The notes beneath the pieces are model-generated. The model did not search any database. It worked only from the letters and a program-made list of their open reading frames with translations, and was not told where the DNA came from. The position numbers and the translations under genes are program-made. Shown in pieces: positions 11,219 to 41,568 of a DNA stretch of 64,000 bases. The DNA comes from Paragordius varius (Eukaryota > Animalia > Nematomorpha), in NCBI GenBank assembly GCA_964247055.1, contig OZ176053.1, positions 3,596,001 to 3,660,000 on the forward strand. The letters run 5' to 3'. Each line of letters begins with the position of its first letter. The stretch's first letter is position 1.

Positions 11219-14200
11219 ATGGTTCTTGACAAAAGTGTAATAGACGAATGGTTCGATTTTGCTATGGGTATAACTAAGAATGCTGGAGAAATGATGAAAG
11301 ACGCTTTTTACAAAGAAAAACACATAGATATGAAACAAACATTCGCCGATTTGGTCACTCAAACGGATAAGGACATTGAAAATTATCTTTTTACCGAAAT
11401 ACGGAAAAAATATAAAGATCATGAGTATTTTTTATCTAATGCATTAGATGTTTGGGTGAGGAAAGTGAGAAAAGACCCTGGACAGATGCGCCAACATGGA
11501 TAGTTGATCCAATTGATGGTACTACAAATTTTATTCATCAAAATCCAAATTGTGCTATTAGTTTAGGGATATCGTGCAAAAAAACAGTATTATTAATAAT
11601 AATTTTAAGATTGTGATAGGAATCGTTTATAATCCAATGAGAGATTTAATGTACACAGCTAAACTAGGTCAAGGATCTTTTTGTAATGGGAAACCAATAC
11701 ATGTTACTGATGTAAAAGGTTTAATATTGGTATATCTTTAGATCTCAATAAAGCACTCATATTTACGGAGGTTGGTTCTTTAAGAAAAGAAAATATTTTG
11801 GATATGAAATTAGATAATTATGCCCGATTAGCCCGGTTATCTCATGGGTAAAAAATTAAATTTAAGCAATTAATTTTACCAACTCACCAATATATTTATA
11901 TATATATATATATATATATATATATCAAATAAAGAAGGTCCTATATATGTTATAAAACTCAATAATACTATATCCTCACTGATACTTTAATGAATTTTCG
12001 TTTTTATGGTTTTTTGCCGTTATTTATTTTTCAGCTTGTACAGAATTATTGAATCAAAAATTTACCAATATTATTGACAAAAAATTGAGGTTTTCTAATT
12101 TTCTTTATTAGTATTTTAAAAATTTAACTTTTTGATTAGTGAAATTATTTATCAATAATTTTTTGTTTTTTAACATTAACGGTATAATAGATTTTATATT
12201 ATTTGATCATGACTTTTTATTAGCTTGTTTCATTCTTTATAGCCAACTATCATTAAAAATATAATTATCATAAAACAATATATCACAATGAAGATGAGTT
12301 AAAAGTATCAAAGTTTTAAATTATATTTTAACGTTTTTACGAAAAGAGTAATAAAGTTCTATAAAAGTTTACAGTTTAATGAGCTAAAATTTTATAATAG
12401 TTGTTAAAACGGTGAACTTATAGTATTTTGATTTTGCGCCACTGTATATTTAATGTATTTAAGATCGCCTTTTTTGTTAGTTTTAATAGGTTTTCTTTAA
12501 ACCTATAATAGGAATGAAAGCGTTTTAAATAAATTTTTTACTAAGAAAGATAGGATACAGACTGAATTTAATCTTATTTGATAAGATATTTTCAAAAAAA
12601 CAATTTTTATTATTCAATTCTCTCAATTTTCTTAATATTTTGAACTTCATGATTATCAGCCATGTTAAAATAAATGATGTAACTTAAGCCCGTACTCTTT
12701 AATAAAAGAAAAAGGAAACTGTGTTTTGCATCAAAATAAAGTATAATTATTTAGGTAATTAAAAAAATTATTGTGTTCTTACTTTAAAATCTAGCTAATC
12801 AAATCCTTTACATATAAAGATAAATTGTATTTTTATTAAATTGTATTTTATGTAATAACAAAATTTCTATCATATTTGTTTTACGCCCTTTTAGCCGTAT
12901 CATCAATACTATCAGTACAATAGCTTAAGAATATAATGAGTTATTTATTATAACAAAAAATTTAGATTATTAAATGCGTAAACACATTTGTTATCGTTTT
13001 AGGATATATTAAAGAATATTTTATAGCAATTTAATATTATATACTTAATTTAACAGTGAATAATTTATTATATCAATATGCTATAGGATATAATTAACAT
13101 ATTTTTTGATTGCTAAACATTACACTAGACAACAAATTTTAACTTTTTTTAACTGCTATTTTTGTAAATTTAAAATTTATTTCATTAAAGTATATAATTA
13201 ATATATCTGAAAAGAAAATTGGTCTAGCATGAAAGAATTTTTTTATATTAGAGTTTATCGATAATTTTTGGCCCCGATTTAACATTAAACTCGAAATTTC
13301 GAAAATTAAAAGTTTTAGATATGAAGCCATGTATTTTATATCATTCGAAAGAGCGCAAAAAACTGCATCTTTTAAATGGTAGTAAGTCATTTAAATCAAT
13401 CGGATGTAAAGGTTATTTGGATTTAAATGGTCGAAATTTTCAATCCTTAAATAAGTCAAGAATTTTCACAGACAAACTAATTTGAAAATCATATAAATTA
13501 TTTTAATATAATTATTAGGGTAATATTAGTATTTGATTTGAAAAAAAATGTTTGAAAAAGCTTTTGGTTTGCTTTTTTAATAAAAATTATCATTATCATA
13601 AATATTTTACCTAGTGGATACTGAAATGCATAGTTATAACTGTAAATTTATTACATAATGGCTATAAAAGATCAAAATTACCTTAAACTTTGTTTTTATC
13701 ATAAAATTTTGAAATTATCAGCCTCGTAAAGAAAATAAATTAATATTGATGAGATGGTAATTTTTAAAAAAACAAAAAACTTAAAAATGGCTGTTTTGAG
13801 TGACATAAAAGCAATAAAAAAATGTTTTAATCAAAAAAACTTTCTTGTGTTATCTTTTTTGGACATTCATCACCATCTAAAGAAAGTTTGAGCTATTTTC
13901 ATCCATTAGTTTTAAAAATATAATAATTTAAAAAAATGCTCTCGCTTCGCGCGTTTGTCGGTCTCTGTGTCCAATATTAACTGTCGATGTAATACATATT
14001 AGTATGCATTTTATAGATTTTTTAATACTCTTTCGAATGATATATTACAAATGGGCATTGCTTGTATATTTTCAAAGAAAAACATTTTTTAGTTAAATTT
14101 TGATAAAGAGGGCGCATAATCAAAAAAATCAAATTATACAAAATTCTTCCATCGGTTTATAATTTTTATTTCAGATTTAATGTTAGAATGATACTAAATA

Positions 14201-38593: not shown

Positions 38594-41568
38594 ATGATTT
38601 ACAAAGTGCGTTTATTTTAAAATTTAGAAAATTAAACAAGTTATTGCTATTTCTTTGGGAGGATCTTTAGTATTCTCTGGACTTGCAATTGCTAACGGTA
38701 ATGAAGATTTTTATGAGAAAATTTTTATGCCCTGTTTATTTAAATTACCTCCGGAGTTAGCTCATTTTATTACCCTTAAGTTTTTAGAATACGGTCTTAC
38801 GCCCCAATATCATTTTGAAACCGAAAGACTAGTAAATATACTTTATTATATAGAAATTTAGAATAAAAAATTTTGCATTTGAAAATCCAATTGGATTGGC
38901 AGCTGGTTGCGATAAAAACGGAATAGCCATAAATGGATTTTTTAAGATTGGTTTTGGCTTTGTTGAAATAGGATCTATCACACCTTTACCTCAACCTGGA
39001 AACGATAAGCCAAGAATGTTTAGGTTGATACCCGATTTAGCCATTATAAATAGGTATTTAAGTGTTTATGTAAATACTAGGTTAGGATTTAATAATCTTG
39101 GTTTCAACGCCGTTTCAACCAATTTAACGAGCACAAATATTCCAAAAACCAAAATTCTAGGTAATATTAACCTTATATAGAACAAAATTAGGTGTTAACA
39201 TTGGCAAAAACAAATTATCCACCGAGCTTTATAATGATTATGTTAAAGGATATGCTAAATTTGCATCACTCGCCGATTACCTTGTTATTAATGTTTCGAG
39301 TCCTAATACACCAGGTTTAAGGGATTTACAAAAAGAACATCACATTGTCGAATTGATTCGTGAATTGGGATTAGCCAAAACGCATTTTTCGAAAGGTTAG
39401 TCGACATATTCATATGTTTTTTCGTTTAGTTCAAAAAGGATTATTAGTTTGTGTTTTAATTTTATTTTATATTTGAAAAAGATTACTTGTAGTAATCGGA
39501 AATTCATTTTAATAAATTCATTTAGTTATAGCTGAATTCTAATTCTAATATTAATAAATATTATTTGAGTGTCCAAAAAATCTGAAGCGTTTAAGTATTT
39601 TTTATAATTTATAATTTTACATATTTTGACATAAATGTTCATTATTTTTATATATTAAGAGAATCAAAACTGCAAAGTACCGCTCCTTTTTATTAAAATA
39701 TCTCCTGATATGACTCAATCTGAAAATGATTCTCTTATCAAAGCTGTTTTAAACAATAAAGTAAGTAATAATATTTTTGTAATCCCTTTTTGAAAATTAT
39801 AAATATGTCACGATATTTGATATAAAGCTTTATTTGTAATTTAGGATATCATTGATGGTTTAATAATATCAAATACCACGATTACACGACCCAAAGATCT
39901 CAAAAGTTCTTTTGCTCAAGAAACTGGAGGTTTAAGCGGGAAACCATTAAAACAAAAATCCACAGACCTAATAAAATATTATTACAAAACAACTAGAGGT
40001 CCTTCTTTTTCTGTTGATATGCATGAATAAGTGTATTAATGGAATCGAAAATCAAACACATATTTATATTTCTATTTTTAACCTCAAATATTATATGGTT
40101 TTTGAAAAATGTAAGCGCATCCATAACTTTATGCATAAATTAAACCAAATATTTATTTAGTAAAAATTCGAGACTAGTTTTATGCTCATTTATTTGCTTT
40201 ATGCTAGCTATATTAATTTTTTCATAGTTAAATAATGATAAACAAGTAGTCCTAATTAAATTTTATATATGTGCCCCATAATATAATTGTAAAAATAATT
40301 ATATCAAAGAGTGGTATTACATTATCTTACAAAAAAGATATTTTAATTTTCAATAACTTATAGTTATATTATTCCATAACTTATGAATGTAAAGTTTTGC
40401 AAGGCAATTAATTATATTACATATTTTTTACTAGGTACAATTCCTATAATTGGTGTGGGGGGAATCATGAGTGGTCAAGATGCTTACGATAAGATAAAAG
40501 CGGGCGCTTCTTGTGTGCAACTTTATACGGGTTTGGTGTATTATGGACCGCCTTTGGTTAAAAAAATATTAGTGGAGTTAGATGGATTGCTAGAGTAAAA
40601 TTTATTTTTTAAATGCTATATGTAGTAAAAAATGTTATAAATTATACGAATAAAACATTTTTGTAATAGATCATAAATTATCAACCTAAAATTTTATTTA
40701 ACTCGCTTATTAATCATAATAAAATTATAGTTTTTAACATTTAATATATATATATACCACATACCTTTGAACACTCTATTATCTCCGAACAATTCAAATT
40801 TACCCTCAAAATAAGTTGTATTTTTGGATATCAAAAATTATTTATATTTTTTAATTTTTAAAAAATGAAATTTTATTTAAAATTAACATAATACCGATAA
40901 AAATGGCATGCATAAAAAAGTTTTTTATATCAATAATATGATAGATTGTCTAAAAACATATATACACTTTAAATCACCCTTGAACAATTTAAATTCACCC
41001 TAAAATAAATTATGTGTTTTTTAAGATAAAAAATTACCTATATTTTTAAAAATTGAAATTTTGTTTAAGATTAAAATAATTCTGAATAAAAATTAAGCCA
41101 TAGAATATTTTGTCTTAATGATGAGTTATATTAGTCCGAAAACGTGATTTTGAATTGTTCCAGTGTGATGAGTTCAAGGGTGAATTTGAATCGTAAATGA
41201 TTTATATTTATTATTAGGGGTAACTAAAAAATTCAAAAGTGAATTAAAAATGTTCAGGGTGAAATTTGAAATGTTTAAGTATGGTTTTAAGGCGTTAAAA
41301 TTTTTGGTTGTAAATGTTATATATATAAAACCTTAAAAAATAATTACCGTAGATTAAGTTTTTTTGAAATCCACCAAAAATTTTAAGTGTTATTTAAGAA
41401 TGTAATTAATTATATTGTAAATAAACTAATTTATATATTAATATATAGATTTTCTAAATTATTATATTTCTTATATTGGCCTTTTTATTTTATAGAAAAG
41501 ATGGTTACAAAAACGTTTCAGAAGCTATTGGATCGGATGTTAAATTAATAAATGTTGTAAATAAATAA
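38594..41568 (+). CDS. DHODH: Dihydroorotate dehydrogenase (quinone), mitochondrial, 395 aa, 9 exons
   Basis: Exons 38594-38605, 38628-38831, 38854-39053, 39081-39160, 39192-39395, 39660-39760, 39845-39998, 40435-40594, 41496-41568 (1188 nt). Motifs [67 protein letters not shown]. Introns 1-4 are 22, 22, 27 and 31 nt. Confidence 0.96.
40750..41280. mobile_element. MITE family C, degenerate or compound copy
   Basis: TATACCAC start with TTCACCC and GGGTGAA units, in DHODH intron 8. Confidence 0.6.

What the first reader, a model, noticed from the sequence alone, without database searches (positions are those of the whole stretch)
11219..41568. Reversed intron-length polarity: micro-introns 5', long introns 3'
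Seen: IMPA (3 micro then 2 long), GMPR (3 then 3), DHODH (4 then 4) and RFT1 (5 then 1) all have every micro-intron before every longer one, within about 0.9 kb of the ATG. Under random order the joint chance is 1/10 x 1/20 x 1/70 x 1/6 = 1/84,000, but this is post hoc and FET (micro at introns 1, 4, 5), the GPCR and Piezo do not follow it. Established: in most animals first introns are the longest. Inference: a promoter-proximal zone of housekeeping genes resists transposon insertion or favours micro-intron splicing (cap-proximal or chromatin effect).
Basis: partly seen in the sequence, partly recalled or inferred. Interest (0 to 1): 0.75.

Follow-up and report, generated by a model that had tools for sequence, protein, structure and literature searches.

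The report
Tiny introns first, long introns later
In this AT-rich worm genome (nearest relative found: a horsehair worm), compact everyday genes begin with introns of only 22-34 bases and end with long, repeat-laden ones; the ordering is far from chance, but the same layout is already published for parasitic flatworms.

Summary
I rebuilt complete start-to-stop gene models. Intron lengths in transcript order:
- IMPA: 23, 23, 23, 2980, 552
- GMPR: 22, 22, 22, 1315, 1506, 145
- DHODH: 53, 22, 27, 31, 264, 84, 436, 901
- RFT1: 22, 23, 23, 25, 34, 91

Exon-by-exon profile matches run on without gaps across the micro-intron joints. With the exception FET included (23, 1118, 1929, 25, 31, then six of 90-785), an exact within-gene order test gives P = 1.7e-5 (2.7e-4 with a stricter cut-off).

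All 18 micro-introns lie within the first 711 nt of coding sequence. Piezo (10 visible introns, 210-1445 nt) and the GPCR-like gene (one ~1.45 kb intron) have none.

RFT1 micro-introns 1-5 sit at the same position and phase as introns of Gordionus (41-51 nt, one 13 kb) and match the first introns of a bivalve (392-2538 nt) in position, so they are old introns that shrank. Eleven downstream bivalve introns are missing from both worms.

A promoter-proximal DNA zone does not fit FET, Piezo, the GPCR-like gene or Gordionus. The layout is published for flatworms (Gyrodactylus 2014, Opisthorchis 2019), and this scan has already noted it on other pieces of this genome. No RNA could be examined.

The parts
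11219..15638 (+). IMPA (inositol monophosphatase) gene, 6 exons, 272 aa
   Evidence: Complete ORF from the GT-AG model. PF00459 matches exon by exon: 3-64, 69-113, 117-150, 190-238.
11425..11741 (+). IMPA micro-intron zone: three 23-nt introns (11425-11447, 11587-11609, 11719-11741)
   Evidence: Only these junctions restore the frame and keep the profile continuous.
11848..15531 (+). IMPA long introns 4 (11848-14827, 2980 nt) and 5 (14980-15531, 552 nt)
   Evidence: Intron 4 carries in-window repeats over 9% of its length.
29274..33382 (+). GMPR (GMP reductase) gene, 7 exons, 358 aa
   Evidence: TIGR01305 is covered 1-343 without gaps by the seven exons.
29361..29630 (+). GMPR micro-intron zone: three 22-nt introns (29361-29382, 29503-29524, 29609-29630)
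   Evidence: Profile joints at 27|28 and 67|68.
29805..33162 (+). GMPR long introns 4 (1315 nt), 5 (1506 nt) and 6 (33018-33162, 145 nt)
   Evidence: In-window repeat cover is 45% for intron 4 and 28% for intron 5.
38551..41568 (+). DHODH (class 2 dihydroorotate dehydrogenase) gene, 9 exons, 399 aa
   Evidence: NF003645 matches exon by exon.
38575..39191 (+). DHODH micro-intron zone: 53 nt (38575-38627), 22 nt (38832-38853), 27 nt (39054-39080, in frame, least certain), 31 nt (39161-39191)
   Evidence: Profile 49-112 | 26-residue exon | 140-203.
39396..41495 (+). DHODH longer introns 5-8: 264, 84, 436 and 901 nt
   Evidence: In-window repeat cover is 44% for intron 5 and 40% for intron 8.
36619..38552 (-). 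RFT1 gene, 7 exons, 571 aa
   Evidence: PF04506 matches exon by exon. 40% identical to Gordionus RFT1.
37715..38492 (-). RFT1 micro-intron zone: 22 nt (38471-38492), 23 nt (38362-38384), 23 nt (38011-38033), 25 nt (37881-37905), 34 nt (37715-37748; alternative 22 nt, 37699-37720)
   Evidence: All five match Gordionus introns in alignment column and phase, and the first introns of Solemya in column.
37278..37368 (-). RFT1 intron 6, 91 nt: the only non-micro intron of the gene, with no counterpart in Gordionus or Solemya
16086..23824 (-). FET (FUS/EWS/TAF15-like) gene, 12 exons. Micro-introns 1 (23666-23688, 23 nt), 4 (20459-20483, 25 nt) and 5 (20345-20375, 31 nt). Other introns: 1118, 1929, 298, 692, 698, 785, 90 and 730 nt.
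   Evidence: The protein is low in complexity, so only the RRM and zinc-finger parts are anchored by sequence logic.
55107..62774 (+). 5' part of Piezo: 10 visible introns of about 210, 421, 1211, 1445, ~400, ~350, 338, ~700, ~350 and 244 nt. None is micro. The gene runs off the window end.
   Evidence: PF24871 places the exons in order. Junctions.
34246..35687 (+). Single ~1.45-kb intron of the GPCR-like gene (33772-36558), at about coding position 470
   Evidence: No Pfam match, so the model is tentative.

Best explanation
Shown: this genome has two intron classes.
- A discrete class of GT-AG micro-introns: 22-34 nt, mode 22-23, one of 53 nt.
- An open-ended class: 84-2980 nt in the five modelled genes, and 210-1445 nt in Piezo.

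In compact housekeeping-type genes the micro-introns are adjacent to each other and confined to the first 711 nt or less of the coding sequence. Everything downstream belongs to the long class.

Shown for RFT1: the micro-introns are old introns, at the same position and phase as Gordionus introns and at the same aligned positions as bivalve introns. They are 22-34 nt here, 41-51 nt in Gordionus and 392-2538 nt in the bivalve. The 11 further downstream bivalve introns are missing from both worms. One of the shared introns has been blown up to 13 kb by retroelements in Gordionus.

This is the gene layout already published for parasitic flatworms, here in an unrelated lineage (nearest relative found: the horsehair worm Gordionus) and with shorter micro-introns.

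Inferred:
- Old introns were cut down to the shortest length that can still be spliced, and are recognised across the intron.
- This state is kept only near the 5' end of the message in genes that are broadly (probably germline) expressed. Recognition of very short introns may be helped by 5'-end-coupled events such as the cap-binding complex or early-elongation polymerase.
- Further downstream, introns were either lost (3'-biased loss) or left free to grow by mobile-element insertion.

The cause of the 5' restriction is not shown.
For: - Gene models and intron table.
- Profile continuity across micro-intron joints.
- Exact order test including the exception FET: P = 1.7e-5 and 2.7e-4.
- All 18 micro-introns lie at coding positions 24-711. 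The FET introns 4 and 5 are 3.3-3.4 kb from the ATG in DNA but at positions 271 and 354 in the spliced coding sequence.
- 9 of 15 introns over 100 nt hold in-window repeats.
- RFT1 comparison: the best library hit for the last exon is Gordionus. Gordionus introns are 41, 42, 42, 44, 12980 and 51 nt. Window introns 1-5 share column and phase with Gordionus introns 1, 2, 4, 5, 6. Four match Solemya introns 1, 2, 4, 5 within two alignment columns, and the fifth lies six columns from Solemya intron 6. Eleven further downstream Solemya introns are absent from both worms.
- Published parallels: Opisthorchis felineus microintrons cluster and favour the 5' end (PMC6530080). Gyrodactylus salaris short-mode introns dominate ordinal positions 1-2 (PMC4040987).
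Against: - No RNA evidence for any junction.
- Only five informative genes in 64 kb. Genome-wide generality rests on unchecked notes from other windows.
- Piezo and the GPCR-like gene have no micro-introns at all, so the rule depends on gene class.
- FET introns 2 and 3 are long at coding positions 173 and 220, so position in the message alone does not decide the class.
- The 5'-end-coupled splicing step is inference. Intron-position conservation was tested for RFT1 only.
Confidence: 0.6

Rival explanations
1. The first ~0.9 kb of housekeeping genes is a promoter-proximal chromatin zone (for example H3K4me3 in the germline) that mobile elements cannot enter, or where insertions are removed by selection. 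Introns there stay minimal, while downstream introns collect MITEs.
For: - 9 of 15 long introns carry in-window repeats; no micro-intron does.
- Intergenic spacers are tiny. The RFT1 and DHODH start codons overlap head to head, so each gene's 5' zone must hold the other's promoter, and an insertion there would hurt two genes.
- Genes likely silent in the germline (Piezo, GPCR-like) lack the zone.
Against: - FET micro-introns 4 and 5 lie 3.3-3.4 kb from the ATG, behind introns of 1118 and 1929 nt that start 196 nt from the ATG.
- The Gordionus counterpart of window RFT1 intron 4 (coding position 579) took up 13 kb of retroelements while a 51-nt intron persists downstream of it.
- The first long intron starts anywhere from about 80 to 1184 nt from the ATG across the seven genes.
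Confidence: 0.25
2. A historical reading. Micro-introns are the old introns that survived 3'-biased, cDNA-mediated intron loss, so they sit at the 5' end. The long downstream introns are younger: gained, slid or born from transposons.
For: In RFT1 the five micro-introns are at positions shared with Gordionus and the bivalve Solemya. Eleven downstream Solemya introns are absent from both worms. The only non-micro intron (91 nt) has no counterpart in either species.
Against: - One gene only.
- Orthologous loci for IMPA, GMPR and DHODH could not be fetched, so the age of their long introns is unknown.
- The Gordionus 13-kb intron is an old position, so old introns can also be long.
- The reading does not explain why the surviving introns are minimal.
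Confidence: 0.2
3. Chance plus post hoc choice of genes.
Against: With every gene that has both classes included, FET among them, P = 1.7e-5 or 2.7e-4. FET on its own also leans to the 5' end (P = 0.07). Other windows of this genome were noted independently with the same pattern (unchecked).
Confidence: 0.02
4. Modelling artefact. The 22-34-nt segments are not introns but assembly errors, frameshift sites or small insertions.
For: No RNA was seen. One segment (27 nt, DHODH) is in frame without a stop.
Against: - 18 of 18 begin with GT and end with AG.
- The lengths are sharply peaked: five of 22 nt and six of 23 nt.
- 17 of 18 are not multiples of three.
- Removing them gives gap-free profile joints.
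- Five coincide in position and phase with annotated Gordionus introns.
Confidence: 0.02

Closest known systems
5'-clustered microintrons of parasitic flatworms: Opisthorchis felineus (Ershov et al. 2019, PMC6530080), Gyrodactylus salaris (Hahn et al. 2014, PMC4040987), and, from my memory only, Schistosoma mansoni (Berriman et al. 2009, not held in the library)
   Same: A discrete micro-intron class beside kilobase introns. Micro-introns are adjacent to each other and favour the 5' end or ordinal positions 1-2 of a gene. The splice sites are canonical. The mechanism is unexplained.
   Different: A different lineage (nearest relative found is the horsehair worm Gordionus, an ecdysozoan). The mode is 22-23 nt, against ~32-37 nt in flatworms. 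In this window the ordering is almost absolute within compact genes.
Ultra-short (under 30 nt) animal introns of myxobolid Myxozoa and Dicyema japonicum (Hadjez et al. 2026, PMC13644364)
   Same: The size class is 22-27 nt. The positions are conserved between conserved exons. Short introns have short neighbours.
   Different: Those genomes are compact and their median intron is tiny. Here the tiny class coexists with repeat-filled kilobase introns in the same gene. That paper reports no 5' polarity, and the lineage here is not among its 51 genomes as a carrier of such short introns.
The 'longer first introns' rule of eukaryotic genes (Bradnam and Korf 2008, PMC2518113)
   Same: Intron length depends on ordinal position.
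   Different: The sign is reversed in IMPA, GMPR, DHODH, RFT1 and largely in FET. Piezo and the GPCR-like gene do not show the reversal.
3'-biased intron loss through cDNA recombination (from my own knowledge: Mourier and Jeffares 2003; Roy and Gilbert 2005)
   Same: RFT1 keeps the first five old introns and lacks the 11 downstream ones seen in a bivalve.
   Different: That model explains where introns remain, not why the survivors are minimal and the later ones long.

Membership tests
Flatworm-type 5' microintron architecture | A discrete micro-intron length class separate from the bulk of introns | tested here: met
   Of the 18 micro-introns, 17 are 22-34 nt and one is 53 nt. The next lengths are 84, 90 and 91 nt, then 145-2980 nt.
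Flatworm-type 5' microintron architecture | Micro-introns of one gene are adjacent to each other (clustered) | tested here: met
   They form unbroken runs of 3, 3, 4 and 5 in IMPA, GMPR, DHODH and RFT1. In FET, introns 4 and 5 are adjacent.
Flatworm-type 5' microintron architecture | Micro-introns are enriched at the 5' end or early ordinal positions | tested here: met
   Exact within-gene test over all five informative genes gives P = 1.7e-5 or 2.7e-4. All lie at coding positions of 711 or less.
Flatworm-type 5' microintron architecture | Splice sites close to consensus, with a reduced polypyrimidine tract | tested here: inconclusive
   GT-AG in 18 of 18. The tract and branch site were not analysed statistically.
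Flatworm-type 5' microintron architecture | The pattern holds genome-wide | not testable with these tools
   Only 64 kb is held. Unchecked notes report the same on other pieces of this genome.
Flatworm-type 5' microintron architecture | Splicing confirmed by transcripts | not testable with these tools
Ultra-short (under 30 nt) animal introns | Introns under 30 nt at conserved positions between conserved exons | tested here: met
   14 of 18 are under 30 nt. Four of them, RFT1 introns 1-4 (22-25 nt), share column and phase with Gordionus introns and aligned column with Solemya introns; the 34-nt intron 5 is at a conserved position too.
Ultra-short (under 30 nt) animal introns | Genome-wide median intron length under 30 nt | not testable with these tools
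   In this window half of the modelled introns are long, so the genome-wide median is unknown.
Usual eukaryotic polarity (first introns longest) | The first intron is longer than later ones | tested here: not met
   The first intron is the shortest or joint shortest in IMPA, GMPR, RFT1 and FET, and is 53 nt in DHODH.

The most novel reading that the evidence does not exclude
Micro-intron splicing in this lineage depends on position at the RNA level. Introns of about 22-34 nt can be recognised only within roughly the first 0.7 kb of the (already spliced) message. One gene would then be processed in two modes: a 5'-end-coupled intron-definition mode, and an ordinary mode further downstream. This would have evolved independently in horsehair-worm relatives and in flatworms.
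Probability: 0.2. Interest if true: 0.85.

Novelty: new member of a known kind. Interest (0 to 1): 0.55.

Why it matters
In most eukaryotes the first introns are the longest (PMC2518113). The reverse layout has so far been described for flatworms, and nobody has explained it there.

Finding the same layout in a second, unrelated lineage, and in a more extreme form (22-23 nt), points to a general constraint on where very short introns can be spliced or kept. A flatworm oddity would not recur like this.

Comparing this genome with Gordionus also gives a direct handle on the process. The same old introns are 22-34 nt here, 41-51 nt there, and one of them is 13 kb there.

There is a practical side. 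Gene finders with default minimum intron lengths will break the 5' ends of many genes in this genome. The RefSeq model of Gordionus RFT1 already reads retroelement ORFs from the 13-kb intron as exons.

Tried and rejected
- Word search with the 218-residue last exon of RFT1 found nothing. The exhaustive search gave Gordionus as the best hit.
- P0001 (a partial Gordionus protein) is not on record as a gene. The full-length cluster member P0151 was used instead.
- DHODH is not next to RFT1 in the 3 kb upstream in Gordionus, so the head-to-head pair could not be compared.
- I prepared an alignment of E. coli GuaC with the seven GMPR exons, meaning to pull out the Gordionus GMPR locus. MAFFT misplaced two exons, the search would have been swamped by bacterial GuaC, and it is costly, so I dropped it. 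The age of the long introns in GMPR, IMPA and DHODH therefore stays untested.
- Pfam found nothing for the GPCR-like ORFs, the 432-residue ORF at 4706-6001 (-) or the 477-residue ORF at 53747-55177. These were not modelled further.
- Berriman et al. 2009 is not held, so the Schistosoma parallel is cited from memory only.
- The held Gordionus genome preprint and a second Nematomorpha genomics preprint do not mention introns. Library searches for hairworm introns found nothing relevant.
- Joined (spliced) protein models were never sent to any search tool. Searches were made exon by exon, by reference. The joined models were used only in local scripts.

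
Full report
**What the window is.** The window is 22-36% G+C in 2-kb bins, about 27% overall. It carries intron-split animal genes. Between 11 and 42 kb lie IMPA (+), a FET/FUS-like gene (-), GMPR (+), a GPCR-like gene (+), RFT1 (-) and DHODH (+). Piezo starts near 55 kb and runs off the window end.

**Checking the observation.** For every gap between neighbouring coding pieces I listed all GT...AG segments that keep the reading frame open, then chose the one that keeps the protein collinear with its family. 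This gives complete ATG-to-stop models. Intron lengths in transcript order:

| Gene | Intron lengths (nt) |
|---|---|
| IMPA | 23, 23, 23, 2980, 552 |
| GMPR | 22, 22, 22, 1315, 1506, 145 |
| DHODH | 53, 22, 27, 31, 264, 84, 436, 901 |
| RFT1 | 22, 23, 23, 25, 34, 91 |

Some details need adjusting:
- The 'long' RFT1 intron is only 91 nt.
- The first DHODH micro-intron is 53 nt.
- RFT1 intron 5 can be read as 22 or 34 nt.
- The 27-nt DHODH intron is in frame without a stop, so it is the least certain.

**Are the micro-introns real?**
- All 18 begin with GT and end with AG.
- Five are 22 nt and six are 23 nt.
- Only one length is a multiple of three (binomial P = 0.007). The narrow 22-23-nt mode may explain that by itself.
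- Profile matches made exon by exon, by reference, run on across the joints:
  - GMPR covers TIGR01305 as 1-27 | 28-67 | 70-92 | 98-153 | 155-216 | 218-284 | 286-343.
  - IMPA covers PF00459 as 3-64 | 69-113 | 117-150 | ... | 190-238.
  - DHODH covers NF003645 as 4-38 | 49-112 | 26-residue exon | 140-203 | 210-236 | 238-285 | 289-338.
  - RFT1 covers PF04506 as 14-40 | 43-147 | ... | 240-301 | 329-506.
- The downstream exons are equally gap-free, so no micro-introns are hidden at the 3' ends.
- I could not look at RNA.

**The exceptions.**
- FET is 23, 1118, 1929, 25, 31, 298, 692, 698, 785, 90, 730.
- The visible 5' part of Piezo has ten introns of about 210, 421, 1211, 1445, ~400, ~350, 338, ~700, ~350 and 244 nt, and no micro-intron.
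- The GPCR-like gene has one intron of about 1.45 kb at about coding position 470. It has no Pfam match, so the model is tentative.

I counted 'long before micro' pairs in every gene that has both classes, FET included, and convolved the exact per-gene distributions.
- With micro defined as 60 nt or less: 4 pairs observed against 30 expected, P = 1.7e-5.
- With micro defined as 35 nt or less: 7 against 29.5, P = 2.7e-4.

The ordering is real in this window.

**Where the micro-introns sit.**
- All 18 lie at coding positions 24-711. Longer introns lie at 173-1238.
- In the four well-behaved genes the last micro-intron is 335-804 nt from the ATG in the DNA.
- FET introns 4 and 5 are 3.3-3.4 kb from the ATG in DNA but at positions 271 and 354 of the spliced coding sequence.
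- Across the seven genes the first long intron starts anywhere from about 80 nt (Piezo) to 1184 nt (RFT1) from the ATG.

There is no fixed promoter-proximal DNA zone, and position in the message alone does not decide the class either (FET introns 2 and 3; Piezo).

**What the long introns contain.** A self-comparison of the window shows that 9 of the 15 introns over 100 nt hold sequence repeated elsewhere in the 64 kb, covering 9-66% of their length. No micro-intron does, and neither do the Piezo introns. This is a lower bound on mobile-element content.

**Comparison with relatives (RFT1 only).**
- An exhaustive search with the last RFT1 exon gave a Gordionus sp. protein as best hit, just ahead of one from the bivalve Solemya velum.
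- The Gordionus locus (L002) is 27.7% G+C, and that assembly is reported at 26.93%.
- Full-length RFT1 is 40% identical to Gordionus and 33% identical to the bivalve and to a sponge. Together with the shared intron pattern this fits earlier scan notes that the genome belongs to a horsehair-worm relative, though a distant one from Gordionus.
- I rebuilt the Gordionus gene. Its introns are 41, 42, 42, 44, 12,980 and 51 nt.
- The 13-kb intron holds two inverted copies of a reverse-transcriptase ORF, which the RefSeq model reads as exons.
- Window introns 1-5 fall in the same alignment column, and have the same phase, as Gordionus introns 1, 2, 4, 5 and 6.
- Four of them match Solemya introns 1, 2, 4 and 5 within two alignment columns; the fifth lies six columns from Solemya intron 6. 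Those Solemya introns are 392-2538 nt.
- The 11 further downstream Solemya introns are absent from both worms.
- The window's 91-nt intron 6 has no counterpart in either species.

So in RFT1 the micro-introns are old introns that shrank, to a length mode specific to each lineage. The 3' two-thirds of the gene lost its introns. An old 5' intron can still be expanded by retroelements, as happened in Gordionus upstream of a surviving 51-nt intron.

**Interpretation.**
- Shown: a two-class intron system with strong 5' polarity in compact, housekeeping-type genes; conserved positions for the RFT1 micro-introns; repeats in the long class.
- Inferred: old introns were reduced to the shortest spliceable length and are recognised across the intron. 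This state persists only near the 5' end of the message of broadly (probably germline) expressed genes. Downstream introns were lost or left free to grow.
- One point speaks for the zone. RFT1 and DHODH are head to head with overlapping start codons, so each gene's 5' region must serve as the other's promoter, and an insertion there would hurt both.
- A purely historical reading (old introns at the 5' end, young introns at the 3' end) is suggested by RFT1 intron 6 but could not be tested on the other genes.
- I cannot separate these readings with the tools at hand.

**What is already known.**
- Ershov et al. [quoted passage not shown] They also find a microintron class in other flatworms (PMC6530080).
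- Hahn et al. 2014 report for Gyrodactylus salaris that ~32-nt introns dominate ordinal positions 1-2 (PMC4040987).
- I recall a similar statement for Schistosoma mansoni (Berriman et al. 2009), but the paper is not held.
- Introns under 30 nt in animals are published only for myxobolid Myxozoa and Dicyema among 51 genomes (PMC13644364).
- The held Gordionus genome preprint does not mention introns, and library searches for hairworm introns found nothing.
- This scan has already noted the same polarity on several other pieces of this genome (s1-270280, s1-261307, s1-243168 and others). Those notes are unchecked by me.

**Verdict.** This is a new instance, in another lineage and in sharper form, of a gene layout known from flatworms. 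The cause is still open.

**Limits.**
- No RNA was examined.
- Only five informative genes were available.
- Intron-position conservation was tested for one gene.
- The FET and GPCR-like models rest on weak homology.
- Joined protein models were used only in local scripts and were never sent to a search tool.

Noticed in passing
window 38550-38553: The RFT1 (-) and DHODH (+) start codons overlap by two bases in a CATG palindrome, so the two coding sequences are head to head with no spacer. Each gene's promoter and 5' UTR must lie inside the other gene. The RFT1 start is backed by alignment with the Gordionus N-terminus. The DHODH start rests on an 8-codon first exon followed by a 53-nt intron.
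   Followed up: partly
window 36556-36621: The stop codons of the GPCR-like gene (+) and RFT1 (-) face each other 60 nt apart, and GMPR's stop is 390 nt before the GPCR-like ATG. Intergenic spacers in this cluster are far shorter than the 3' introns.
   Followed up: no
window 39054-39080: Only one of the 18 micro-introns has a length that is a multiple of three (27 nt), and it has no in-frame stop. If retained it would add 9 residues to DHODH. The lack of other 3n lengths (P = 0.007) may simply reflect the 22-23-nt mode.
   Followed up: partly
L002 3728-16707 (Gordionus sp., OX940784.2): The RefSeq RFT1 model XP_065315307.1 (802 aa) reads retrotransposon reverse-transcriptase ORFs inside a 12,980-nt intron as exons. 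It also misses the true exon at 3626-3727. The corrected protein is about 590 aa.
   Followed up: yes
L002 3350-3391 against window 38034-38361: Gordionus and the bivalve Solemya have an intron (42 nt and 590 nt) at alignment column 103 of RFT1. The window species lacks it, which is a lineage-specific loss of one 5' micro-intron.
   Followed up: yes
window 14520-14800, 16200-16410, 19440-19575, 31330-31660, 40900-41200: A short repeat family built from tandem 'aattcaccct...'-like units recurs, in both orientations, inside long introns of IMPA, FET, GMPR and DHODH. It looks like a MITE.
   Followed up: partly
window 44100-46100: ORF fragments on the + strand that looked to me like a non-LTR retrotransposon reverse transcriptase, in the repeat-rich stretch between DHODH and Piezo. 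One fragment (44276-44686) had no Pfam match; the rest were not searched. Within-window repeats cover 87% of 42-44 kb.
   Followed up: no
window 53747-55106: A 477-codon open frame rich in Ser, Asn and Pro ends in the stretch that splices (210-nt intron) onto the first conserved Piezo exon. Its last ~25 codons, from an internal ATG, resemble the usual short Piezo N-terminus.
   Followed up: no
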